The notes below the pieces were generated by a model that saw only the letters and a list, made by a program, of their open reading frames with translations, searched no databases and was not told the DNA's origin. A program made the position numbers and the translations under genes. This document shows positions 8,998 to 63,917 of a stretch of 64,000 nucleotides of DNA, piece by piece. Source of the DNA: Utricularia gibba (taxonomy: Eukaryota; Plantae; Magnoliophyta); NCBI GenBank assembly GCA_002189035.1, contig NEEC01000016.1, positions 1,116,001-1,180,000 of the forward strand. Direction: 5' to 3'. How positions within the stretch are numbered: the stretch's first letter is position 1; every line of letters begins with the position of its first letter.

Positions 8998-11900
8998 CTA
9001 CTTGTTTGACCACTGGATTTCGATTTCGAGGTTTCTTGAAGGCCCACTTTTGCTTTCAGGCAGCAGAGGGTACTCTCCGGCAACTGCCCCGACCATCACC
9101 ACACGGTCAATTTGGATTGTCACCTTCCCGAATGAGCTCTGGTTTGTCAAATCGATCAATGGGTGAGAAGTGAGAATGAGCACAAAGAGGAAACTTGTCT
9201 GGTTTGGCATATATTGTATGTGTACCTTTCCCATTTTGCTCTTGTTCTTGCATGAAATGTGAAGCTTCTGGCCTTTAGGTGGGCTTTCGAAGGACCAGGC
9301 GAAGCTCTCGTCCCACTCCGGGTTGGGGCCAGTGGACACGACCTGTTAAGCAGAAACATGTTCAGGCATTTCTTTTTTAACACGTGACCATGACGATGTA
9401 ACTGTAATCAACCTTTGTTTGTCTAGGGGGCGTGTTTCCAAGTGTAAGCTTGCAGTAAACACTGGGATTTCCAACAGACTGCCTCATGTTGTTTCCTCGC
9501 TTGATTATGACAACAAGAGTCCCTGGTAAGCATTGTAGCAAGAATTCAGCTTTCTCCTGGAAGCGTGGAGGTGCGGATTGTATCAAGTACTGTAAAGTTG
9601 GAATAGCATCAGCAGCAGCAATGGATTGGGCCCGAGAAACTTCAGCAGGACAAGCCGTCCATGCTTGCCTGAGAAGGAATAGAGCATCCAGCGCAGCTTC
9701 TTGGGTTGCTTCCGTACCCGTCTTGAGAGAAGTCACTAGATGAGGAATGCTTAAAATTGCAGGTTCGGATGCCCTGAGGCGGGGGAAGTTGCCATATAGC
9801 GCATTCAGAGCCTTCAGATACTCTTCGTTTACAGTGCCAGTAGCCCACAAGTCCTTCTCGATTGCAGCTGCAAGAGAACAAGATTCACCAACGCATTTAT
9901 AATCCACAACGTGATGCATAAATCATCCATTTCAATTAACCGGACATTCAAGCAGGAAAATGAAACCTTATTGGGGAGTTACCTGTGATTGCTCTCACAG
10001 TTTCGCTGGAAGCATATTCCTGAATAGTACTGCTCGAGAAAAGGAGCTTGATAAACATTGCTGCCTGGATTGATGTTTCAGGTTCACTAGAACTAATCAG
10101 GTCCAGTATAACCTGCACCCCACCTCCTTCTGCAACCGCCCTTTTATTTGACCGGCTGTACATCACCAGGTTCTGAAGAGCACATATAGCAACTACTTTC
10201 ATTTCCTCAGTTGGTTGATCTTCGAGCAAATTTACTAGTGCTCGGCATGCTGAAACAGCATCAGCAGTTCGAGCAAGAGCCTCGTTTTGGAATAAGTCGC
10301 CCAGTGCAAGTGTTGCCAGCAGCCTTGCTTGCTGGCCTTGTGTTTGAGGATCCAGAAGATACTGGGAGAGTGGCAAAATAGCAGATTTTGTAGCCTTAGA
10401 TTCTCTGATCTTTACATTGTTAAGTAGCACCTCAAGCAATCTTGCAGCTGTTTCCTCGCACTGATGACTCCTGAGAAGATCAAGGAGGGCCTCAATAGCG
10501 CCACTTTCAGCCATTGCTTGGGCACTTGTAGAGTCATCACTCTCCAAAACTAGAAGCGCATTGAGTGCACCAACCACAGTACTCTCTGAACCTGATCTGA
10601 GCAACCTAACCAGTACTGCAATGGGCACTTCCAGATAAAATTCAGAGCTGAACTTCAGAATGCTAGATAGTACGGAAGCAGCCGGCTCCCACAAGGCATG
10701 AGGGGTTAGGGGATCAGCTTGAAGTATGACTTTCGACAATTCATTCACACCACCTTCTTTTGCAATATCATTTGGCCAAGTAACTTCTAGACAGACAAGA
10801 GCTCTCACAGCTCTCTGTTGCAAAGCACTAATTCCAGAGCTAAGCATCCGCACAAGTGGGCCAATTGCCTGCTGTGCAAGTGGATCTTTCCGAAGATGTT
10901 CCTCCAAAAGCAGGTGAGATAGAAGCTCAGCAGCCAACTGCTGAACTGCTGTTGACGGTGAGTCAAGTAAAGGCAAGAGGGGTTCCAAAGCTTGATGAGG
11001 TGTTAGGCTGTAATCTGCACGACATTGTGGATGCTCTAAAATATTCACAAGTACTTGCAATGAGCTGTGCTGTCCATCTGGACCAAACTCAGATCTTGCA
11101 AGCAAATGGAGGAGAGGCTCAACAACTTTTGCTGCTGATGGACCTTTAGCAATGGAAGCATTATTAGTGAGTATTCTAAGTAATTCAGCAAAAGCAGCAC
11201 ACAAGAAATCTGGAGCTTCTTCAAGGATCTCGAGGACAGACTCTATAACGCCAGCTTTCACCATTTCAATCTTGCATACAGGCCTATCTCTACCTAACTT
11301 AACAAGAGCTCTTGACACAGCTTCATGGAGCAAATAACTTCGACCATGAAGAAGGCCTACAAGTGGGATCACAGCACTATGAGCAGCAACAAGCTCGGTG
11401 AGCTGCTCATCATCTAAAAGTTTATCCAGTGCACGAACAACAGAAAGCTGTGCTGGACTGTTCTCTATGACTAGGAGAGAAACCAACGGCTCAACACACC
11501 TAGCAGCTGCCACGGTAGATCTTATTCTCGTGTTGCCAAAAAGCACACAGCATAACTCAGCTGCATCGCCCTTCAGCTCCAATGAATAATTTGAAGAAAG
11601 AATCCTGCATAAGACATCAATAACATTCATCTCAATATCAACCACTACAAGAGCCTTTGATGGGTTTTCATTAAGGAGCCTAATCAGTGCAGCAATGGCT
11701 GCATGTTGCTCTTTCTCTAGACCTGTATTTAGAATCTCAACCAAAGGCTGAGCAGCTTGTCTTGCTGATTCAGTATTCCTCACATGATCAGCAGAAAATA
11801 AATTTTCCAAGGCTTTTGCAGCACTATATCTCGCTGCTCTTCCACCTAATCGAAGAACTGCTATAAGTTGACTGACAGCCCCAAATGCTGAGTCATGTCT

Positions 11901-49889: not shown

Positions 49890-50613
49890 GTTGACTTGCG
49901 TTGTTCGAAGGTTTCCCCTTTTTTGAATTCTAGATGTCTTTAGTGAAGTGAATTCAATTAGTTTAACCGTAAGTCTTTGTTTTTTTAATTAATTTAGATT
50001 TTCATGAGTTTAGATTATTTGATTTTAGACGAGTTCAAATATATAATTATAAAAATATTCATATCCTCTTTAGATATACATACCAAATTGATATAATTAT
50101 ATTTAAATATCGAATAACATAATTTTATTAAATACATTATAAATCAACCTTAATACTTTTTAACAATATGATTTTATTAAATTCATTATAAACCAATTTT
50201 AATACTTTCTTATCAAATAAGGCATAAATCCTAAAACCATCCCCAAATTGAAGTCAATATTTATTTTGGGTTTGGTAATAAATTTTATGGGATTTTTTTA
50301 TAATGACTTGCATTAATTGAAATAATTATTTTAAAAATATTATTTAAATAAGTTGAAATCATTTTTTTAATTTAATAAATTAAATAGTTTAAAAAAATGG
50401 GATCCCTATTTTGAGAAAAGGGTCTACTGATTTTACTAGAAACCCCCATTTCACATCGCCCTTGAGGGCTGGGTTCATTCCAATGTTTCAACCGCCTCTC
50501 CTCTCTCTCTATCTATCTCTCTTTTCTCTGGCTTTACCCTCATCGATGTGGTTCCTCGTTAGTTCTTGATTCATGGGCACCTTCCCTACAAAAGAAAAAA
50601 CGAAAATGAAACG

Positions 50614-50760
50614 ATGGGAAGAGATGAGGAGGCTTGACAACCTGAGTGCACGCCAGGTAATGTCTTTTCAAACAGAAGACAAGGCTTGACCTCAGCAAGA
50701 AGGGTAAGGAGCTCTCAGTTCCTGGCGAATCTGGAAGCTCTCTCATTTCTCTACGTTCAG
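50614..50760 (+). pseudogene. MADS-box exon remnant (array unit A)
   Basis: ATGGGAAGAG.. followed in shifting frames by [37 protein letters not shown] and a CAG|GT donor at 50760. It has multiple indels and an early stop. Confidence 0.8.
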
Positions 50761-51289
50761 GTTCTCTGCTCCTTGCTTCTTTGTTGTTTCAACGGGAAAC
50801 CCATCTTAGATCTAATCTGATTCTCCAAGCAATGAAAACTTCATTTCTCCATCTGAGTTCTGCTTTTGAAAAGGAGGAGGGGGGTTTTCTTTTTGACACA
50901 AACAACGCTTACGACCGTACAGCCATTCCTCTGGGGAGTGTGCCTCCCCCGCTCCCGCTGTGTAAAGTGGTCTCCTTAGCCTGCTACATATCCAGACTAT
51001 GCTTCGCGCAGTGGCAACCATTGATGCGTCCGTACATCCCTTACGTGTGCTCTCAACGGTGGCAATGGACAGACTTCCTCACTCCGGTCCGGTCCGGGCC
51101 GTTTCGGTCTGGTTAAAAGGAAAAACTGATTAACAAAAAAAACCTATTTTAAAATCAGGTATTGTTTATTTTAAACTGAAGTTAGTTAGGATTCTTTTTT
51201 TCTTCCTGTCTGAAAAACGGCTTCCGCTTTTAGCAACCTCCTTCTTGTTTCATTTCAATCAGTGCAGTCTTTTTTCAAGCATTTTTGAC

Positions 51290-51438
51290 AACACAGGAAA
51301 TTTCAGCGCTCGGCAGGCAGCTTTTTCAAAGAGAAGAAAAGGGCTTATCTGGGAAGCTAAGGAGGTCTCGGTCGTGCGGTACCCAGAAACTGCTCTCGTA
51401 AGCGCACGGGGAATGCTCTTACATTTCTCCAGCTCCAG
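51290..51438 (+). pseudogene. MADS-box exon remnant (array unit B)
   Basis: [47 protein letters not shown]|GT. There is no start codon, an internal deletion, many substitutions at invariant MADS residues, and no recognisable K-box exons downstream. Confidence 0.8.
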
Positions 51439-52860
51439 GTTCTATCCTTTTCTTTAATCTGAGCTCGGTTTGCTGTTTTTTTATGCAAATGTTGACTTCA
51501 CATCACTGTGATAAAAGGGTTTTGTGGCAAGAATCTTGGACCATCATATGAAGATGTTATTTTCTCCTCACCCCTTTTGGGAAGAAATTTTAGGGATCTG
51601 AGAGTGTAGCAAATGTTCATCTGTTCCGTATAGTCGCTTCCTAGAACTAATCAGTAATTGATATTTCTGGGATTGGAGGTTTAATCAATCAAATGATTTC
51701 GTTGCTTATGCAATGGCTGCCTAATTAATCCCACCATGTTCCTTGATTACACTTGAATGCAAGCATCCACGAATTGCTGTTTACAGTAGCTTGTAACTCG
51801 TTGATGGCATTACTAAAGACTAGAAGATAAGCTACGTTGTAATGATATGATTAGAGCATAATGATGAAAAGTGGTGTCTTAATCTTAGTTTGTTTTTATC
51901 GAATCAGGCAGTACTTCGAGTAAGCTAAACTCGAGCATCTTGGATTCCTTTTTCAGAAGTCCATGCTGAAAAACTCGACCGGGCAATTACTTAGAAGGAC
52001 ATTTTGTGCTACAGCCCTTCATATCTGATAGAAAAGGATCCCATGATCCTGAACCGATCTTACCTGGGATCGCAAATCCCATGTTTGTCTATGAAGAGAG
52101 GATATGTTTTTTGTCTGAAGGATGAATGGTATGATCCTCAGAGGTATAACATGCAGTCCAAGCGCCCCAAGAAGATGGGGTCTGCTAGAAAATCCTGATT
52201 AAAGTTAGCATTATCCCAGCTTCACGTACACTGGTTGTACTCATACCCAACTTGAGCTTGAGTTAGTAGCAGCAGCATCACCATGTGCCCAAGAACGAGG
52301 AGTGGCGGCTGTTTGAAACCAGTGGACTGCCCACATCAAGTGCAGAAGTGGTGGTAGGGATGATGCATCAATGTGGTATACCTACTATCAATGAAAAAAA
52401 CAACACTCTTATTACAGTTTACAAATGTGCATGTGGTTTGTCCTGATAAACCATAGAAACATAGTGGCCGAATTCAAGGACCCTGATAGCTGTTAAATTG
52501 TAGAATGCAGAATGCCTGCACAATAAACAACAGCCTATTTTCTAAAGCTTGTTCTTCATCATTACTGTTTTGAATGACCAAAATGGTTTCTTAATCAATG
52601 AGATGCATGTCGGTGCACGGGAAATCGGGATAAAATTGGTCCAAATCGGGTAAAGCGTTGGTTAACTTGGTAACGAATGAATCGTTTTTAGATATCTGTG
52701 GAATCACACGGATGTGATCCATGGACGACAGCAGCCTGGACCACTGACAAAGCCTCTTTCTTTTCGTCTATTCTTCTCATTTTAGTTCATTTCAGCGAAA
52801 CCCCAGGTCAAATATTCGAACCCTTCTCTTCCTGTGGCTGAATTCTCTCAGTCCGTAAAA

Positions 52861-54603
52861 ATGGTGAAGGAGAGGATCAAGATCAAGAGAATTGAAAACC
52901 TGAGCGCCCGGCAGGTGACTTTTTCTAAGAGAAGAAAAGGGCTTATCAAGAAAGCCAAGGAGCTGTCTGTTCTCTGCGATGCCGAAGTTGCCCTCATAAT
53001 CTTCTCCTCCACTGGGAAGCTCTTTGAGTTCTCCAGCTCCAGGTGAGTCCAGTTTCTTTTAGTGTGTGCGTGCGGGTTGCTTCTTACTTGGATAAATCGG
53101 GGGAACACCAGATCCGTAACAGAAAATAGGGGTTCACGATCTGGAGATTCCTCTTTCTTACATGACCTTGTTTTTCTTTCAAAGATTGTTTCTGGGGATA
53201 TTTGAATCTAGTTGATGTTCATTAGTTCTACGCAGTCATTTCGGTTGTAGCAAGAAATTGGCATCTGTAGAGGATTTATGGTATTTTCTGCGAATAACGA
53301 ACCTAAGTTTCCAGTCTCAAAACATCTTAGAAACTAGAAGGAAATAGAAATACAAGGGAAGTCGAATGCAAGACAGAAGTTCTGCAAACACTACAGTAAT
53401 TAAGCTAAGATGGTTGTTGATTGGGATGTGGTAAAAATCTGACAATTGTGAAGTTCAACTTCCCTGTTAGATTGATTACTTGCTGTCGGCTACCTCTATG
53501 CATTGCTTTGTTATTACCATTAAGTCAAGCTAAACTCATGTTTGTCTTTTTTTGATGGCTGTGAAGCATGGATAGTATACTTGAAAGGTTTAATCTGGTG
53601 TCCAAGAGTCATGAGACGCAGGCACAGCAGCCCTCACTTGATCTTCAGGTACTAGCGAGATTTAGTAGTATGCACTGCCCTTGAACTGCGAATGATATCG
53701 TGGTTATGGCAGCTTCTGGTGAATGGTGATTTCCCCACATTAAGCAAAGAAGTGGCTGAGAAAACCCGTTTACTGAGGTAGTGTGTTTTCACTTGATTTC
53801 TTGAGAAAACTTGGTTATATCGATACCTGAACGGAATTTGAAGGCGAATGCGAGGCGAAGATCTCCAGGGACTGAGTCTCCAAGAGCTGCAATCTTTGCA
53901 GAAGTCACTAGCAATAGGATTGGATCGTGTCATGGCCAAGAAGGTAGTTGCAATGCATCCATGAAAGAAAAACCCTTGAGAGAATCAAGGCTGCCCTTTT
54001 GATTCTCATGGTCTTAACTTTTTCACAGAATGAGAAGATCGCTAAACAAACAATTGAATTGCGAGAGAAGGTACATTCCTCATGCTTCACTGGCGCATTT
54101 CTCATTCTTTGTCCAACACTGGTACCCGAATGTGCAGATATTGCAGCTCTCAAAGGAGAATGCCCTTCTCAGACAAGAGGTATATGTTGCAAGTTGCAAC
54201 AACGTGTGTTCCTCCAAGACAGAGCAGTAACCCACCTTCAAGCAACAAGTATTCTTCTTACCTCCACAACTCTCTTATTCAGGTGGAGGATGTGTCAAGC
54301 AGCAGCCAGAAGATGTGCACCGCAAGCTCAGAAACTATACTCTACGACGACGTCCCATCATCATCGTTTTCTAAGAGCTCGTCGGACACTTCTCTCACAC
54401 TGGGGTGAGTGGTCTTCTTCATTCCTGCAATTGCAGCTAGTCACCTTTTCCAGGAGCAGAACTTCTTCCGCAGCAACTCCTACTTTGTGAATCGTACCAG
54501 TTCCTCTTTGTACTCAACTTCACCAGGTGTTGCGCTTGTGTTTCGTTGCAGTGCCGCCTGCATCGTAGATGAAACCAGCCGAGGTACCGGTGCTTCATGG
54601 TGA
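52861..54603 (+). CDS. SVP/StMADS11-clade MIKC MADS-box protein (array unit C, apparently intact)
   Basis: Exons 52861-53042 ([60 protein letters not shown]), 53567-53648, 53713-53777, a 100-nt [10 protein letters not shown] exon, two 42-nt exons and an exon ending SSDTSLTLG (54404). The last exon and stop position are uncertain. Confidence 0.9.
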
Positions 54604-56381
54604 TGCGTGTGCATGCCACAGTTTGGAATCATTTCCACAGCATTTCCCTTGTTTGTGTTATGTTCAAACCTAATTCTAATTCATAAAAAAATCATCTTTG
54701 GGATAGTCTTTTAAACATGTGAATGCTTCTATAAAAAAATTTAATAAATATTTTTATTATTAAATATGATTGGTTTATATTATAAAAATATGATTTTTGT
54801 TAAGAAAGACTGTACATCTGAAGCGTTTTTTTATTTGTAGACTTATAATTTCTAGTTTATTAAAAATATGTTTTAAAATATTTTTTGAGAAGTAAACATA
54901 TTGTCCATCATTCAATACCCATAGTTTACTTGTATAATATTATTTCGTTTTAGATATATAATTTTTAAAGGTAATCTATTTATATAACCACATTCTGTCT
55001 TCGTCTCCTAATATATATGAGATAAAAAAAAAAGTATTATGGGAGAGAGGAGGGAGAGCTCAATTTTTTTAATATATTTTCCACATAAATTTTCAAAAAA
55101 TGAGAATTTAAAATAAATTTATGTTTTATAAATGTAAAAAGGGATTACATAATAATAAATATGCTACGTTGTAAAATGATAAATCAATTTGTAATAATAT
55201 AGAAATAACAATAAAAATTTAAAACTCTAATTTCTTGAAATTCTAAAAAAAATTTACAGAAATGAATTTAAATAAATAAAAATAAGATCATTGAATAAAA
55301 AATTATTAGAATGAGAACTAAAGTAAACTTCCATATTCTTGTATGAAAAATTTTATTCAAAAAAAAAGAATGTAAAATCGTGAGAGTTGAGTACCGTACT
55401 TGAAGAGGTTAATATACTTCAAGGAGATGATGTCTATTTGATATTAAAGTCAAACCGGAATCCTTAATTGATGGTGGGATAAGGTTCAATGAGGATACTA
55501 AATTTTCAAGGTAAGTGAAATAGACCTAGTTCAAGGAATAATATAAGTATATTAGATGAATTCTATATCAGTTATGAATGAGATAGAAAAACATTTTTTT
55601 TATAAAGTCATTCTCTAATTTTATATGATATATTTTCTCTGAAAAATAAAATAAAATCATAAAATTTGAATACTCAAAACAAATAATATTATACAATAAT
55701 AGTATGGGTCATAAAAGATCAAATGAGCAAAATCTTTGATTGACATTCATGTGTTATTTTTTAGAATAATAATTTCATATTTTTTTAAAAAATGAACAAT
55801 AATGTTTTTTCAGAATTATTAATTTTTTATTTAAAAATAAAATGTGGTAGCATTAATCAGTTCCAAGGGCTAGAGAGTGGGGCGGGCATCTTTTAATAAA
55901 TGTTGGTTCACTTTCTCTCCTCTGTCAGAGTCCATGGTTTTTGTTTCCTGCCAAAAAAACCAGAAGAGTCCATGGTTTTGGTTTTTTTTTTTTTTTTTCT
56001 TGTTCTCTCTTTCCGACGGCTCCTATTTTTAGAAGTCGACGTGCTACCCACCGGCTGTCACGTGAAGACCCGACCGGCTTCCCTTTCCTCAGCGTTCTGG
56101 AATAATTTGTTCGGAGTGGAAAATGGCAAAAAAAATCAGATGAACCCTTTGCAGGTTTTATGTGGAATGGAATGAAAAATGCTGAGGAGGAAACTCTCGC
56201 TCAAAATGTTTTTTTTTGCGATAGACAAGTAATGCACTACTCGGAATTCTCAACAGAAGCTCCACAAATCTAGGAGCAGAGGGAGAAGGAATCTTGAAAG
56301 AGTAGCCATCTGTTGGAGGATGTGGAGAAGTTTGTCGTCTCATTTTCCAACTAACATCATAGATTACAGACATTCAGTTCA

Positions 56382-57164
56382 TTTTCCAGGAGAAGAAAAG
56401 GGCTCATCAAGAAGGCTAAGGAGCATTCAGTTCTCTGCGATGCCGGAGTTCGCCTGATAGTCTTCTCCTACGCTGGGAAGCTCCGTGAGTTCTCAGGTTC
56501 GTACATTTTTTTCTTGTTTGAAGTGGTTGTTTCTTTCTGAAAAGGGCGTTTTCCAGACATTGGGGCATCAGATCTCTTGGAGAAAAGGATACTTGTGACG
56601 TTGTTGGCCATGATCTGGAAACATTTCTTTGCGTTGCCATATTCATTGTTTCCGTACCACCTAGAAACTAAGTACTGAATGGAAAAAAAAAAGAGAGAGA
56701 AAGAAAGAAAGTATGTCCAAGAATAGCTACCAGGTTTTTTTTTTTTTTTTTTGTTTGAAACAAAATCGTATTCGATTCGCATTTTCATTATCCATTTGAG
56801 AGCAAAATGTGCTTCAGTCAAGGAAGGGTTCATACTTCAAAATGTGCAAAATGTGCATTGCACATTTCTAGAATGAAAAGCATAAACTCTATCTTATGTT
56901 ATGAATGATAGCTTCTGCTTCCTACGATCCTCGCAAACTGTTGTGTTGATAGTAGATGCTTGCTGCATCTTTTGTTGCAACATTCAAGGCATATTTCACA
57001 CTTCTTGCCGTTTGTTATGATCTGAATCCCGTTTTTCCAACGCATACCATGATGCTTCAGTTATGATACACTACAATCATGAAGAATGGAGGATCTACTT
57101 CGGAGGTAGAGCTTGAAGTCTGAATCCTGAGAAGATGGGACGGCAGCCATGGCTTGATCTTGAG
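56382..57164 (+). pseudogene. SVP-like MADS pseudogene (array unit D)
   Basis: [38 protein letters not shown]|GT (56382-56496) lacks the N-terminal part of the MADS box. The exon-2 remnant 57085-57164 aligns to unit F exon 2 but has an in-frame TAG and a frameshift. No K-box exons were found. Confidence 0.85.
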
Positions 57165-58393
57165 GTAAGAAGTATGCTGCTTCAGTCATATCCTGCTTCT
57201 TGATGAGGCAGCAACTAAGCTACATGTCTCAAGCTAGTTTTTCACTCTGATGAACTACATGAGAAGGTAAGGAGATGGCTAGGCCTAGGGTTACCCTGCT
57301 GATCACAACTGTGCTTATGCTCATGCATTTCTGTATGCTCGTTTCTTCGAGCTGTCTGTGCTTGATGTCTCGTTCCGGATCCTCAGCTTCCTGGAACAGC
57401 ATGATCTACTAAGATGCGAGGCTGGTGTTGGTGAAGCTTCATGCTACATCTTCCACATTCTTCTCTAGATGTTGGATGTATCAAATGGTAGCTTAAAAAG
57501 GACTACCAGAAGCTGCTAACTAGGTGAAGTTCGATCATCTGAATCTCAGTACATGTTGTAATATTTAATTACAATGGTTTAATTATTAGAAGAGAAAATT
57601 ACGAGGAAATTAATAAATCAAAGACTTGGGTTAGTCTTTGATGGTTGTAATCGAATTTATAATCTTTCATAAGATTTGACTCGATTGAATTATCAAGTCT
57701 ATGATTTATTGATTCTTTTTTTCTTGTTCTTATTCCTTTCAATCTACACGATGGATGGACGCCATCAAGATTCCAAAAGATCATCACACAGCCACTGTCT
57801 CATTCTTCATTTGGAAGGAGTTTCCACTAATGAAGCTAATGTTGTCCTTGGTTGAAGGCACCAAAGGAGCTTCAATATGTCATCCTTAATGTTTGGAAAA
57901 CACACATTCTTGAAATCCTAGCACTTGGAACTTCAATATTTGACATGATCTGATTTTGTTAAAATCGAGTAAATTATATTTTCAAGTAATTTATCGAATA
58001 TTTTAAAAGTTTTTTTTTTTTCTAGAATGAGAAACTTGAACCCTAAATTATGAGGATAGTCATATGGAAACACATCAAAATTTTAAAATTTTCTAAAATA
58101 TATATGTATTTTTTAATTGTAATGAATAAAAAATAAAAAAAGGAGGGGTGGGTGTGGTCCCGCATGTGCACAAAACACTGTCCACTCCATTTGGAGCTCT
58201 CGCTTCTCTGTCTTCCTTTCTACGTGTGTGTTTGCAACTGGATTTATCAAGTCCTATTTTTAGAAACACCTTTTACTTTACAAGAAACCCCACTTCATAG
58301 TTTCGCCTTCTTGCTTCCTGCTGCAGTCATCTCAACCCAGTCTCATCCAAATCCAACGCCACACCCGCCACCGACCGAGACTCAGCTCAAGGT

Positions 58394-60304
58394 ATGGCTC
58401 GGGAGAAGATCAAGATCAAGAGAATCGACAACCTGAGCGCCCGGCAAGTCACTTTTTCCAAGAGAAGAAAAGGGCTCATCAAGAAGGCTAACGAGCTTGC
58501 TGTTCTCTGCGATGCTGAAGTTGGTCTCATAATCTTCTCCTCCACTGGGAAGCTCTTCGAGTATTCCAGCTCCAGGTACCCTTTTGTATGTGATTTTTAT
58601 CTCTGTGTTAACATTAGATCTTCTGGGGGAGTGTTTGAATCAATCCCAGTGGCATGATCTGAAAGTATTTCTTGTTCTTTGCCTTCCTGCCAAGTTCCAG
58701 TTCGGGATCTGGTACTGAGTCAACGTTTAATGCGTCCGTACACCCCTTTGTAGGTGTTTTCGAACTAGAAGCCATAAAGTTTAACAAGCAGGCATATGTT
58801 TATGTTGCAGAGACCTTTTTCCCATGAACCCAAGTTCCTACATGCATCAAAAAAAGATTTTTTTAAGGGGGGGATTGTGTTCTTTATACAAATATGTTTT
58901 TTCTTTGTGCTGCTTCTTTCATATGGCATCACCAAAGAAAACAATTTTATGATGCAACTTCTGCTATTTGAGCATGCAACCCTTGCTTTGGAATACTTCA
59001 TTGGCTTTAAGAGCTGATGGTGTGGAGAGCCAGGGTTCTAAATACAATTTGAAAATGGTTTTGTCTACCCAATGTAAAACGATCTGCTTCATTTTATAAG
59101 AAATTCTTGTGTGTTCTAATGAAATGATATGTGTTATAGTTCAAGGTGGATCATTTTGCCTTGTATTGAACTTGATTTCTTCCTTGGGGTATATGAGGAA
59201 CTCTATCAATTCCCTTCATCTGCATTAACCATAAAATTTCATGTGTTTTCATCTTGATCATTACTCAAAATCCTAGCAAGTTTCTCTGCATCGAAATCCC
59301 TTTATTGCGTTTTACCAAGAGGAATGCATAGTGAAGCATCATTTTCCCCTACCCTCCATGAAATCCAAGCTGATACACTCTTTCGTTTCGATGCCATAAA
59401 GCATGGACGATATTCTTGAAAGATATCGTTTGCATTGCAAGAATGCTAGCAATCTGGTGCAGCCCTCACTTGATCTTGAGGTACTTGTATATACTCGGTT
59501 CTTGATTTTCGTTTAGTTGCTTCACTAACGAGCTGCGCGGACTTTGCAGCTTGTGGTTGGCAGTGACTTACCAACACTAAGCAAAGAAGTGATAGAGAGA
59601 ACTCGCCAACTCAGGTGCTCTACTCCTTATATTTGTTATCTCAAGCTCTTCTGATACTCATTTACTGATGAAGGCGCATGAGAGGGGAGGATCTACAGGG
59701 ACTGAGTATTGACGAATTGCAATCTATGGAGAAGTCCCTCGGGGCAGGACTGAACCGTGTTTCTGCGAAGAAGGTAGGCGCTAAAGCTCGTACCCTTTGC
59801 AAAATATCATACATTGAGTCATCATCTTGGAATTTCTTGATAGAATGAGAAGATCAAGAAACGGGCTGACGAACTGCAACAGAAGGTTAGCTTCATCATC
59901 TTCTTGCTTCTTGGTACATGGCCTTCCATGGCAGACACAGTCTAGTACTCATATATTGACATGCATGTCGACGTTCAGATAATGCAGTTAGCAGACGAGA
60001 ATGAGCTACTGGCACGAGAGGTAGGTGATGATGAAGCATTCATTCCTTCATGGGCTACCTACTCCTCAAATAAAATCTGCTGCTCAGGTGGAGTATCTAT
60101 CTAATAGAAGCCACCCAGACGGCCCTCCGAGCTCGGAAACTACAGGCTTCGACGATGTACCGTCGTCGGAATCCACCACCTCCATCACAGATCCTATTCT
60201 ATCCAAGAGCTCATCGGATGCATCACTCACACTAGGGTAAACCCCTTTTGTTTTTTCACTGATTTTTCATTTTTCACTACAGACGAGCACAATTCGAGCA
60301 GTGA
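58394..60304 (+). CDS. SVP/StMADS11-clade MIKC MADS-box protein (array unit E, apparently intact)
   Basis: Eight GT-AG exons: [35 protein letters not shown].. (58394-58575), [15 protein letters not shown] (59402-59480), [57 protein letters not shown], ..[15 protein letters not shown]. Confidence 0.92.
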
Positions 60305-62116
60305 CTGAGTGAAAACTTAACAACATTCAAGGCTGGGTTGCAACGTCCCCGAGCCCGATCGAACTACTTCTTCCAAGGGTTCACTTCTGAGCGAAACGCT
60401 GTCCTGAAAGGGAGTTCTGGTTCTCGGTGGAAGATGCGAGTTACAGAGACCACAAGGTCGCCGGGGTACCTTCAGAGGTGCTTTGTTTCTACGTAGAAGC
60501 TGTTCCTGCTATACTTTGCGCCCTCTTGATTTTTTTTGTGGGATTATTAGAAATTTATGTTTTAAAATCAACCATTCGATTTAATAATTTTTTTTATAAA
60601 TGTAAAAATATTATGGAGTATAAAAATGTAAAATTTAAATAATTACTTTTATTTTGTATAAATCATGAATAAACAGGATAATGAATTGAATTGGAATTGT
60701 CCCATTTAATTATTAAGCGCACAAGTTTTACTGGTGTATATTTATTTTTGTTTTTGAAATTAACAACTTTTTATAATTTTCATATAGGTATAATTTAATT
60801 TAGGTGTTTCAAAATAAAAACATACTACATCTTGGAAACTTATGCACAATTTTATCTTGTTTATAAGAAAATTATCAACATTGTGATTTATTATGTTATT
60901 GATGATGCATTGATAAAATATTTGTTTTTAAAGGTATTAGTTTGTATGATAAATAAGTTAATAACTCTTAAATCAATATTACGAACGAAAATTTAAAAAT
61001 ATAGTAAAATGTGTAATTAAACTTAAAATTGTATCATTATTAGATATTAAAACAACACAACTAATGTCAATGAAAATAAAAAGAACTGTAAATGTCATAT
61101 CGTATATTGCAGTATTGACGATTTGAAATGAAATAAATGAAAAACATTTCAAACAAGTTAATTTTTAAACAAAATTAATATAAAGAGTATAGTTTATGAG
61201 CTATAATAGATATTAAAGAAATCAATATTTTTATAATTAAGTTGATATGAATAAAGAACTAATTTATTGAATGTTCTTTTGAATAGCTGCACTTTTTGAC
61301 GTATTTTTAGTAATTTCCTTATTGGGAGCATTGCTATTTTAATATAGAGGATGACAAAATGGAAGTCACGTGATTCGTTGGATTAATCGAATCAGGACAT
61401 TAAATGACACGTGGCATTAAGCCAGTGGTGCTTACGTTAAAGCTTCCAAATTTGAAAACTATGCTGTTGGTTAAATCTGGACACATTTTTCCAAATCTGC
61501 CCTTTGACGTAATTAGGAAGATAGGTTTTGGTTATGAGCTGGACAATTAAGGCTCTAAAACACTTCTTAATTCTGCTTTTTTACTTTTAAAATTTGTAAA
61601 ATGAATTTAAAAGAATAATGGCTGCTTTTCCCAAACTGCCCTGTCCTTTATTCTTTCCCATCTGGTGTTTGGCTTTATCGTTGTTTGTCTCAAGGGTACT
61701 TTAGTACATACACATTACTGATATAAATACAGTGGCATTCCAGGAAAATTGAAGCTCACTGTTCCTCGCATTCAAACGTCCTTGTCTGTCATCTTGGTCA
61801 GACAAATTTTTCTTCCAAAAATGCCCTCGAGAAATGGAAAAATAAACGGCATGTGGGAAACAATCTGAAATATATATTATATAGATGTATGTCAGAATCT
61901 TTCGCTGGGAGGGCCTTTTGGTCATAAATGTATTTCTCTCACTACCAGCGAGAATGAATTGGGACAGCAATACTGGTTATATTCGGAATCCTCTCTCTTG
62001 GTGTTCGGAAGCCGGCTCCTGTTTTTAGGGATTTTCTTTTATGTGGTCATTTCTGAGCAGTCTTATCTTTTTCAAGGAGATCTTGACCTGTGATCTGAGC
62101 TCTGGGATGCCCAAAA

Positions 62117-63917
62117 ATGGCACGAGAAAAGATCAAGATAAAGAGAATCGACAACTTGAGCGCTCGGCAAGTGACTTTTTCCAAGAGAAGAAAAGGGCTC
62201 ATCAAGAAGGCTAAAGAGCTCTCAGTTCTCTGCGATGCCGAAGTTGGTCTCATAATCTTCTCCTCCACTGGGAAGCTCTTCGAATTCTCCAGCTCCAGGT
62301 ACCCTTTTTCTCTTGCTTCTTCATTTGAAGTCTTTCAAGTGTGTGTTTCTTTTTTTCATCAGATCTTAGGGAGAAAAAGAGGGTTTTGGGGGTCTACACT
62401 TATTTTTCCACCATACAAGTATGTGTTGGGATCTGAGAATTTGTAACATGGTGTCAACGTGCATACACCCACTTTTGAAGAAGCGCAGAGCAATTTGGTT
62501 TGGCTCAATTTGCACCAACGCTGTAGCAGAAACTTGTTCTCTCTCTTTTGGGCGTTCCTTTTTCAGGATCAGTAGATTTAGACCATATTCTCTTCAAATA
62601 GCCATTTTTTTAATAAACTAGGGTAGTGTGTGAATGATACGATGTGTGTGCATTGTGCTTAGAACCTTAAACTCACTTGTAATAAATGACGCCAAGCTTA
62701 GTTTAATTCGATTGTAGTCTGTGTAAACTTATTACCTAAACTGGTTATTTTATCAAGTATTGTTTAACTTAATCAACTTGTGTTGTGAAGTTCAACTCTC
62801 ATACACATGTGAATAGGGCAAACCAAATTCTGTCACTTGCGTTGTACATAACAAGCCTTTTCTGTACATTGAGGAGAAGCTAACTTTGGCTCTTTTTTTG
62901 ATGGTGAGAAGCATGGATGCCATGCTTCAGAGGTACAGTCTGCAGTGCATTCATAATCCTGATAAGCTGGGGCAGCCATCGCTTGATCTTGAGGTACTAC
63001 CATGAAGTGTTATTGTTCATAACCTGACCTTTTGTATGTTTTTTCTGCGTCACAACGTTGGTTGCATTGCAGCTCGTAGTGAACAACAAGTTCCCCACGT
63101 TAAGCAAGGAAGTGATGGAGAAGAACCGGCAACTGAGGTAGGCTTCATGGACTTGTCGTATAACCCCCAGCTTCTTTGATCGTGATAAGGGAAATGTGAT
63201 GCCAAAAACAGGCAAATGAGAGGGGAGGATCTCGTGGGTCTGAGCATTGGCGAATTGGAGGCTATGGAGAAATCTCTGGAAACCGGATTGAACCGTGTCA
63301 CTGCGTTGAAGGTAGGCACAATGCAAGCACCTAGGGAAGCATCAGAGAACGAAAACTAATACTCTTATCGTACTGTTTTGCAGAATGAAAGGTTCATGAA
63401 GGAGACCAATGAACTACAGGACAAGGTCATGACTCTTAACCTCGAGTATTGCTCGGTTTCGAAAGAATGACGCCTTTCTCGACGAATATGCAGGTGATGC
63501 GCCTAACCAAAGCGAACGAGCTACTGAGAAAAGAGGTTCAAACTACACAGCTTTTAGTGCATCGCAAGGTAGGTTGGAGGATCGAAATCAGTTCAGTTAG
63601 TTACCTCTTCTTACATGTTCAGGTGACCAACATTGATTATACAAGACACAAGATGAGCGCAAGTTCAGAAGCCATGCCCTACGATGAGATACCCTTATCG
63701 GAATCCCAAGGGAACTCGGCGCGACATCCACAGGATTCCAAGAGCTCATCGGACACCTCTCTTACTCTGGGGTCACTCTTTTAGACGCTTTTTCTCCTTG
63801 GTAGTGCAAATGTACGCAGCTCGAGTCAAGTGATGATATTTATCAGATGCTCTTTGCTGCAGACTCTCCTGCAATGTGGCGGAATCCAAGAGAGCTCACT
63901 GCGGCGGCGCGCTTTGA
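62117..63917 (+). CDS. SVP/StMADS11-clade MIKC MADS-box protein (array unit F, apparently intact)
   Basis: Eight GT-AG exons: [35 protein letters not shown].. (62117-62298), [15 protein letters not shown] (62912-62993), [52 protein letters not shown], ..[26 protein letters not shown]. The last acceptor is the best guess. Confidence 0.92.

What the first reader, a model, noticed from the sequence alone, without database searches (positions are those of the whole stretch)
50614..63917. Tandem array of six SVP/StMADS11-clade MADS units undergoing birth-and-death
There are six same-strand MADS-box exons at ~50.6, 51.3, 52.9, 56.4, 58.4 and 62.1 kb. Three have complete MIKC exon sets and three are remnants (seen). 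Most eudicots have only a few SVP/AGL24-like genes, and tandem expansions of this clade are linked to dormancy and phenology, e.g. Prunus DAM genes (established). The intact copies differ strongly in their I, K and C regions, suggesting sub- or neofunctionalisation of flowering or dormancy repressors. The array may continue beyond the window. I recall SVP-like tandem clusters being reported for Utricularia gibba, so the cluster itself may not be new, but the interleaved pseudogenes may be unannotated.
Basis: partly seen in the sequence, partly recalled or inferred. Interest (0 to 1): 0.75.

Follow-up and report, generated by a model that had tools for sequence, protein, structure and literature searches.

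The report
Known bladderwort SVP flowering-gene cluster
This is a row of three working and three decayed copies of an SVP-type flowering-time gene in a very compact plant genome, probably the bladderwort Utricularia gibba; the expansion is already published, so only the decayed copies and some fine detail are new.

Summary
Six same-strand MADS-box exon-1 matches lie between 50.6 and 62.3 kb.

- **Intact genes.** Three start intact 7-exon MIKC genes with all-GT-AG introns: A 52861-54408, B 58394-60240 and C 62117-63784.
- **Relics.** psi1 and psi2 are exon-1-only wrecks. psi3 lacks the first ~19 codons. Its exon 2 has a stop and a frameshift, and exons 3, 4, 6 and 7 are gone.
- **Age and selection.** A, B and C are old duplicates (Ks 0.85-1.14, 63-68% amino-acid identity, introns and flanks unalignable). 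They are under purifying selection (dN/dS 0.20-0.24), so this is no misassembly.
- **Phylogeny.** The three form one clade (100/100) inside the angiosperm SVP/StMADS11 family. They sit with SVP, INCOMPOSITA and JOINTLESS, and they carry the one-residue insertion seen in that group only. An AU test does not formally exclude the StMADS16/AGL24-like group (p = 0.12).
- **Literature.** Published work already reports the U. gibba SVP expansion, six SVP1-clade copies and SVP tandem duplication.
- **Earlier scan note.** The scan noted a similar seven-locus array on another piece of this genome (s1-233707). I did not check it.

New here are the pseudogene map and unexplained low synonymous divergence in the MADS exon. 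Species identity, expression and function were not tested. Interest is low to moderate.

The parts
50600..50765 (+). psi1: relic of MADS exon 1 only
   Evidence: blastn matches exon 1 of A, B and C at 71-73% identity, E down to 7e-11. The alignment runs from a start-codon region to a CAG|GT donor-like end and has several indels. tblastn needs two frames, and one has an in-frame stop. No downstream exons were found.
51299..51442 (+). psi2: relic of the 3' three-quarters of MADS exon 1, donor site kept
   Evidence: 73-80% DNA identity, E = 5e-19; Pfam SRF-TF only 26 bits. It has no start codon homology and a 6-nt deletion. Conserved MADS residues are replaced. No downstream exons were found.
52861..54408 (+). 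Gene A: intact 7-exon SVP-type MIKC gene, 212 aa
   Evidence: Exons 52861-53042, 53567-53648, 53713-53777, 53844-53943, 54029-54070, 54138-54179 and 54283-54408. All introns are GT-AG: 524 nt, then 64-103 nt. SRF-TF scores 95.8 bits. The C-terminus ends in the SVP-type [10 protein letters not shown] motif.
56382..56494 (+). psi3 exon 1: MADS exon lacking its first ~19 codons
   Evidence: 85-87% identity to exon 1 of A, B and C, E = 9e-35; SRF-TF 54.5 bits covering profile positions 11-48 only. Upstream sequence is unrelated, and the 3' end and donor region are altered.
57081..57167 (+). psi3 exon 2 (I region): in-frame TAG and a frameshift
   Evidence: 74% identity to exon 2 of C, E = 3e-11. 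The three-frame read shows a stop and a frame change. A weak exon-5-like tail lies at 57250-57268 (E = 0.03). Exons 3, 4, 6 and 7 were not found.
58394..60240 (+). Gene B: intact 7-exon SVP-type MIKC gene, 220 aa
   Evidence: Exons 58394-58575, 59402-59480, 59550-59614, 59674-59773, 59844-59885, 59979-60020 and 60088-60240. All introns are GT-AG: 826 nt, then 59-93 nt. SRF-TF 91.7 bits; exon 4 matches K-box at 27.8 bits.
62117..63784 (+). Gene C: intact 7-exon SVP-type MIKC gene, 224 aa (235 aa with the alternative exon-6 donor at 63568)
   Evidence: Exons 62117-62298, 62912-62993, 63073-63137, 63212-63311, 63384-63425, 63494-63535 (or -63568) and 63623-63784. All introns are GT-AG. SRF-TF 92.5 bits; exon 4 matches K-box at 25.9 bits.

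Best explanation
The region is a head-to-tail array made by old tandem duplications of one SVP-type (StMADS11-family, most likely SVP1 subclade) MIKC MADS-box gene. The genome is very compact and belongs to the Lamiales, probably Utricularia gibba.

Three copies (A, B, C) are kept by purifying selection. They should encode transcription factors that bind CArG-box DNA through a nearly unchanged MADS domain. Their I, K and C regions, which choose dimer and tetramer partners, have diverged strongly. By analogy with SVP, INCOMPOSITA and JOINTLESS, they most likely act as regulators, often repressors, of the vegetative-to-floral transition and of meristem identity.

Three further copies died at different times and are being removed by deletion. 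psi3 died later and still has two or three recognisable exons. psi1 and psi2 are older and keep exon 1 only.

Shown here: the anatomy, the family placement, the age and the selective constraint. Inferred: DNA binding, altered partner choice and the role in flowering or phenology.
For: - Anatomy: six MADS exons, three complete 7-exon models with GT-AG introns and three broken copies.
- Family: the best named homologues are SVP/AGL24/JOINTLESS. In the careful ML tree the SVP family separates from FUL-like outgroups at 99/95 and angiosperm SVPs group at 98/99. A+B+C form a clade at 100/100, with A sister to B+C at 96/64. The window clade lies outside the 98/98 clade holding Nelumbo, group II and the StMADS16/MPF2/AGL24-like group.
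- SVP1 marker: the extra residue after the LELQ motif (QLVEN-type against QLEN-type) occurs in nearly all of the eudicot sequences that sit with SVP, INCO and JOINTLESS in that tree (one has I there, and the two OfSVP3-type rows are too rearranged to read). It occurs in A, B and C, and in none of the StMADS16 group, Nelumbo or group II.
- C-terminal SVP motif SSSD(T/A)SLTLG in all three copies.
- Constraint and age: Ks 0.85-1.14 and dN/dS 0.20-0.24 overall, with M 0.06-0.14. Introns and flanks show no similarity.
- Literature: five U. gibba SVP homologues in a species-specific expansion (PMC4350169); six SVP1-clade copies and SVP tandem duplication in U. gibba (PMC6251477, citing Lan 2017).
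Against: - PMC4350169 reports low to null expression of the U. gibba SVP homologues in flowers.
- Subclade placement is not statistically secure. Forcing the clade onto the StMADS16/AGL24-like group costs 10.4 lnL units, p-AU = 0.117, and the backbone of the SVP1 assemblage is a polytomy.
- No Arabidopsis AGL24 or genuine Prunus DAM sequence was in the tree.
- Species identity rests on genome style, Lamiales-type sequence signatures and the scan's own unchecked notes.
- The I region of copy A has dN/dS 0.68-0.86, which could mean relaxed constraint rather than new function.
Confidence: 0.85

Rival explanations
1. The array belongs to the AGL24/StMADS16 (SVP2) subclade, the one that holds the Prunus DAM arrays, and not to SVP proper.
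For: The AU test does not reject the window clade joined to the StMADS16/MPF2/AGL24-like group (p = 0.117). In an earlier taxon set a constrained tree of that kind even scored slightly better than the free search. The window proteins are on a long stem (0.47-0.62 changes per column), so their placement is fragile.
Against: The free careful tree puts them outside that group, which is itself supported at 98/90 inside a 98/98 clade. They carry the one-residue QLVEN-type insertion found only in the group that holds SVP, INCO and JOINTLESS. PMC6251477 assigns the six U. gibba copies to SVP1.
Confidence: 0.1
2. Only one copy is a working gene. The other 'intact' copies are young unprocessed pseudogenes whose frames are open by chance, or the array is an assembly duplication.
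For: PMC4350169 notes low or null expression in flowers.
Against: The copies differ at Ks about 1, yet all keep 212-224 codon frames, all 18 introns keep GT-AG, and dN/dS is 0.2 in every pair. That cannot happen without selection on each copy. An assembly artefact would give near-identical copies, but introns and flanks do not align at all.
Confidence: 0.04
3. The MADS exon is kept alike by repeated gene conversion limited to exon 1 (domain-specific concerted evolution) while the rest of each gene diverges freely.
For: Four-fold degenerate sites are 73-75% identical in exon 1 in all three pairs, against 36-43% in K and 38-50% in C. Ks in exon 1 is 0.37-0.69 against 1.1-2.9 elsewhere. The pseudogene psi3 is still 84-87% identical to the live copies in exon 1.
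Against: Similarity stops at the start codon and about 10 nt into intron 1. A run test on variable sites gives no tract that survives correction (best pair B-C p = 0.02 of six tests). The exon-1 and whole-protein topologies agree, with B and C closest. Synonymous constraint in the first exon explains the data equally well.
Confidence: 0.2

Closest known systems
Utricularia gibba SVP1-clade expansion (Carretero-Paulet 2015, PMC4350169; Lan 2017 as cited in Liu 2018, PMC6251477)
   Same: Lineage-specific expansion of SVP homologues; tandem duplication; six SVP1 copies reported. The three intact genes here fit as half of that set.
   Different: Those papers, as far as I could read them, do not describe the three interleaved pseudogene relics, the age of the copies or the exon-1 synonymous conservation. 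I could not read Lan 2017 itself, and I could not prove that the window is U. gibba.
SVP (Arabidopsis), INCOMPOSITA (Antirrhinum), JOINTLESS (tomato): the SVP1 subclade
   Same: MIKC architecture, the SVP C-terminal motif, the QLVEN-type insertion and tree position.
   Different: Only 53-60% identical to any of them. The C-terminus is shortened and ends at or just after the SLTLG motif, without the LGLPY tail. There are seven exons, tiny introns and a fast-evolving stem.
Oleaceae OfSVP3-type lineage (Osmanthus SVP3, Olea JOINTLESS-like X3), which includes MADS-RNase H fusions such as Abeliophyllum 'SVP3'
   Same: A MADS-domain signature (S15, K26, L/I29, K33, S50) is shared only by this lineage and window copies A and C; copy B has N at position 33. 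One tree puts the Olea protein as sister to the window clade at 88/71.
   Different: The sister relation is lost in the larger tree. No RNase H-like sequence lies in this window.
Prunus DAM1-6 (evergrowing locus) tandem array
   Same: Tandem array of StMADS11-family genes produced by serial duplication. It is a precedent for arrays of this family controlling seasonal growth.
   Different: DAM arrays are reported in the SVP2 (AGL24) subclade (PMC6251477), whereas these copies carry the SVP1 marker. No dormancy link is known or tested here. No genuine DAM sequence was in my trees.

Membership tests
MIKC-type (type II) MADS-box transcription factors | SRF-type MADS DNA-binding domain at the N-terminus | tested here: met
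   Pfam PF00319 at 92-96 bits (cut-off 26) over the full 48-position profile for A, B and C.
MIKC-type (type II) MADS-box transcription factors | K-box coiled-coil region downstream of an I region | tested here: inconclusive
   Exon 4 alone hits PF01486 at 25.9-27.8 bits, just under the 30-bit whole-protein cut-off. Only single exons were scanned, because the joined models were not sent to the family tool. Alignment to INCO, SVP and JOINTLESS is collinear through the whole K region.
SVP/StMADS11 clade | Phylogenetic placement inside the clade, apart from other MIKC clades | tested here: met
   The family separates from the FUL-like and other outgroups at 99/95. Angiosperm SVPs group at 98/99 and include the window clade.
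SVP/StMADS11 clade | C-terminal SVP motif (acidic/serine stretch followed by SDTSLxLG) | tested here: met
   All three end in SSSD(T/A)SLTLG, aligned with the same motif in SVP, INCO, JOINTLESS and OfSVP3.
SVP1 subclade (SVP sensu stricto) | Groups with Arabidopsis-type SVP rather than with the AGL24/StMADS16 or SVP3 groups | tested here: inconclusive
   The free tree places it with Brassica and Camelina SVP, INCO and JOINTLESS, outside the 98/98 clade of the other two groups. The AU test of the alternative gives p = 0.117.
SVP1 subclade (SVP sensu stricto) | One-residue insertion after LELQ (QLVEN-type against QLEN-type); a marker found here's data set, not a published definition | tested here: met
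   Present in A, B and C and in nearly all of the eudicot sequences that sit with SVP, INCO and JOINTLESS (one has I there; the two OfSVP3-type rows are too rearranged to read). Absent from the StMADS16/MPF2 group, Nelumbo and group II.
DAM-type dormancy arrays | Orthology with Prunus or Malus DAM genes and dormancy-linked expression | not tested
   No genuine DAM1-6 sequence was retrieved, and no expression data were available. The literature puts DAM-rich Prunus copies in SVP2 (PMC6251477).
Birth-and-death gene array | Diverged functional paralogues interleaved with pseudogenes, without array-wide homogenisation | tested here: met
   There are three constrained genes (dN/dS 0.2) and three relics of unequal decay. 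Non-coding parts are unalignable. Exon 1 alone shows reduced synonymous divergence, which is unexplained.

The most novel reading that the evidence does not exclude
The DNA-binding exon of all three live copies, and of the youngest pseudogene, is held alike at silent sites. The cause would be either exon-1-limited gene conversion or a functional element embedded in the MADS exon. Meanwhile the partner-choosing I, K and C regions diverge. The array would then be a natural set of factors with the same DNA targets but different partners, co-orthologous to the little-studied Lamiales OfSVP3 lineage that also gave rise to MADS-RNase H fusions.
Probability: 0.2. Interest if true: 0.45.

Novelty: already known. 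Interest (0 to 1): 0.25.

Why it matters
SVP-family arrays are a recurrent way for plants to tune flowering time and seasonal growth, and U. gibba is the model for extreme genome shrinkage. Three old paralogues survive here under selection, while three others are caught at different stages of deletion. This gives a small, clean picture of gene birth and death in a genome with strong deletion bias. It also gives exact gene models for functional tests. It does not change what is known: the expansion is published.

Tried and rejected
- The bacterial promoter and terminator scan is meaningless for a plant locus and was ignored.
- CArG boxes (CCW6GG): 8 in the window against 6.2 expected. Only one is in the array, and it overlaps the start codon of C, so there is no signal.
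- Rfam finds only a tRNA at 22.3 kb.
- I aligned single exons by reference to full-length SVPs to build a search profile. MAFFT scattered the fragments, so the profile was dropped.
- No protein more than 60% identical to A, B or C appeared in any list. I therefore found neither other Lentibulariaceae copies nor a public annotation of these genes. Because the word search is limited by query length, and the spliced models were not searched, this says nothing about their absence.
- Lan 2017 is not held in the paper library.
- The gene-conversion run test was not significant after correction.
- An RNase H domain like that of the Lamiales MADS fusions is absent from the window.
- The search of earlier findings by sequence returned nothing.
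Full report
**Observation.** I translated the MADS exon at 62117-62296 and searched the whole window with it. This gives six + strand matches and no other match better than E about 1. Three are full-length and 87-95% identical to each other as protein: 52861-53040, 58394-58573 and 62117-62296. Three are partial or broken: 50624-50720, 51299-51436 and 56379-56501. Pfam SRF-TF scores are 92-96 bits for the intact exons, 54.5 bits for the 56.4 kb copy and 26 bits for the 51.3 kb copy. Self-comparison of 49-64 kb shows that only exons align between units. Exon 1 aligns at 87-92% DNA identity and other exons at 67-79%. Introns and spacers do not align.

**Gene models.** I read the three frames around each tblastn hit. 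Each intact copy gives a 7-exon model with GT-AG at all six introns.
- A: 52861-53042, 53567-53648, 53713-53777, 53844-53943, 54029-54070, 54138-54179, 54283-54408 (212 aa).
- B: 58394-58575, 59402-59480, 59550-59614, 59674-59773, 59844-59885, 59979-60020, 60088-60240 (220 aa).
- C: 62117-62298, 62912-62993, 63073-63137, 63212-63311, 63384-63425, 63494-63535, 63623-63784 (224 aa). An in-phase alternative exon-6 donor at 63568 would give 235 aa.

Intron 1 is 524-826 nt. The other introns are 59-103 nt, which fits a miniature genome.

The joined protein models were never typed and never sent to any database tool. Those tools received single exons by reference. The joined models were assembled only inside scripts from window.fa, for local alignment, Ks and trees. 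The step of searching the public databases with the spliced proteins was therefore left out.

**Relics.**
- psi1 (about 50600-50765) covers exon 1 from a start-codon region to a donor-like CAG|GT. It has several indels and an in-frame stop.
- psi2 (51299-51442) keeps the 3' three-quarters of exon 1 and the donor. It has no start, a 6-nt deletion and replaced core residues.
- psi3 keeps exon 1 without its first ~19 codons (56382-56494, 85-87% identity). It also keeps exon 2 (57081-57167) with a TAG and a frameshift, and perhaps an exon-5 tail (57250-57268). Exons 3, 4, 6 and 7 are gone.

Over the same 113 columns, psi3 is 84-87% identical to the live copies, which are 88-93% identical to each other. 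psi1 and psi2 are 65-77% identical to the live copies. The deaths therefore happened at different times.

**Age and selection.** A, B and C are 63-68% identical as proteins. By domain, identity is 87-95% in M, 41-62% in I, 60-67% in K and 47-61% in C. NG86 gives Ks 0.85-1.14 and dN/dS 0.20-0.24 for whole genes. M is 0.06-0.14. The I region of copy A is the highest, at 0.68-0.86. Open frames and 18 canonical introns at this divergence require selection on each copy. The divergence also rules out an assembly duplication.

One oddity remains. Four-fold sites are 73-75% identical in exon 1 against 36-50% elsewhere, in all three pairs. No convincing conversion tract was found, and similarity ends at the start codon and about 10 nt into intron 1.

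**Family.**
- Word searches with exon 1, and then with two retrieved full-length proteins, return proteins named SVP, AGL24 and JOINTLESS.
- A full HMMER search with a Nelumbo SVP gave representatives across the family and beyond. These were labelled through cluster look-ups.
- In the final careful tree of 60 rows, the SVP family separates from a FUL-like outgroup at 99/95. Gymnosperm SVP-likes are basal, and angiosperm SVPs group at 98/99.
- A 98/98 clade holds Nelumbo plus two eudicot groups. One has StMADS16, MPF2-like and 'AGL24-like' proteins (98/90). The other has OfSVP5, Quercus, Nepenthes and others (100/99).
- A, B and C form a 100/100 clade, with A sister to B+C (96/64).
- That clade sits outside the 98/98 clade, in the unresolved assemblage with Brassica and Camelina SVP, INCOMPOSITA, JOINTLESS, OfSVP1 and OfSVP3.
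- AU tests do not reject joining the window clade to the StMADS16 group (p = 0.117) or to the 23-row clade (p = 0.53). The tree alone is therefore not decisive.
- A discrete character helps. Nearly all of the eudicot sequences that sit with SVP, INCO and JOINTLESS have one extra residue after LELQ (QLVEN-type); one has I there, and the two OfSVP3-type rows are too rearranged to read. A, B and C have the extra residue. No StMADS16-group, Nelumbo or group II sequence has it.
- The MADS signature S15/K26/(L,I)29/K33/S50 is shared only with the Oleaceae OfSVP3 lineage and window copies A and C; copy B has N at position 33. One tree made that lineage sister to the window clade at 88/71.

**Context and species.** Upstream lie PIG-M (49.1-49.9 kb), a MATE transporter, a 14-3-3 gene, a very large ARM-repeat gene and a VQ gene, so the window is gene-dense. 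The array's left edge is the PIG-M gene. Gene C ends 216 nt before the window ends, so I cannot say whether the array continues. The compact introns, the Lamiales signatures and the scan's own notes all point to Utricularia gibba.

**Literature.**
- PMC4350169 reports an orthogroup of five U. gibba SVP homologues as a species-specific expansion, with low or null expression in flowers.
- PMC6251477 reports six SVP1-clade copies in U. gibba and states that tandem duplication of SVP genes occurred there, citing Lan 2017. Lan 2017 is not held in the library.
- The same paper puts the Prunus expansion in SVP2, so the DAM analogy is a parallel.

**Verdict.** The finding is real and correctly read, but the cluster is already known. 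The additions are exact models, three relics of graded decay, the old age of the copies and the exon-1 silent-site conservation. Function as a flowering or phenology regulator is inferred from family membership only.

Noticed in passing
window 52861-53042, 58394-58575, 62117-62298: Silent (four-fold) sites of the MADS exon are 73-75% identical between all three live copies, against 36-50% in the K and C regions. Flanking non-coding DNA is unalignable. Neither conversion nor constraint was demonstrated.
   Followed up: partly
window 54907-54965 and 55661-55719: Inverted repeat with 59-nt arms, 73% complementary and 695 nt apart, in the AT-rich spacer between gene A and psi3. It may be a small MITE-like element.
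   Followed up: no
window 63494-63568: Exon 6 of gene C has two in-phase donors. GAG|GTTCAA at 63535 matches the position used in A and B. A stronger AAG|GTAGGT at 63568 would add 11 residues.
   Followed up: no
protein P0442 (Abeliophyllum 'SVP3'), not in the window: This database protein is a MADS exon joined directly to an RNase H-like (PF13456) domain. Its MADS domain has S15, K33 and S50 of the Oleaceae-type signature seen in the window copies. No RNase H-like sequence occurs in the window.
   Followed up: partly
window 9377-15728, minus strand: Several long ORFs with armadillo/HEAT repeats (851, 842 and 189 aa) look like exons of one very large ARM-repeat gene. From memory, the Arabidopsis ARM-repeat gene CSI1 lies on the same chromosome arm as SVP. 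That would be a weak synteny hint, and I did not test it.
   Followed up: no
window 22285-22356, minus strand: A tRNA gene (Rfam 66 bits) is the only Rfam family hit in the window.
   Followed up: no
window 50113-50208: Two adjacent 47-nt AT-rich direct repeats, 85% identical, lie between PIG-M and psi1.
   Followed up: no
protein P0237, not in the window: A 452-aa database protein consists of two complete SVP-like units in a row. It is probably a read-through annotation of a tandem SVP pair in another plant.
   Followed up: no
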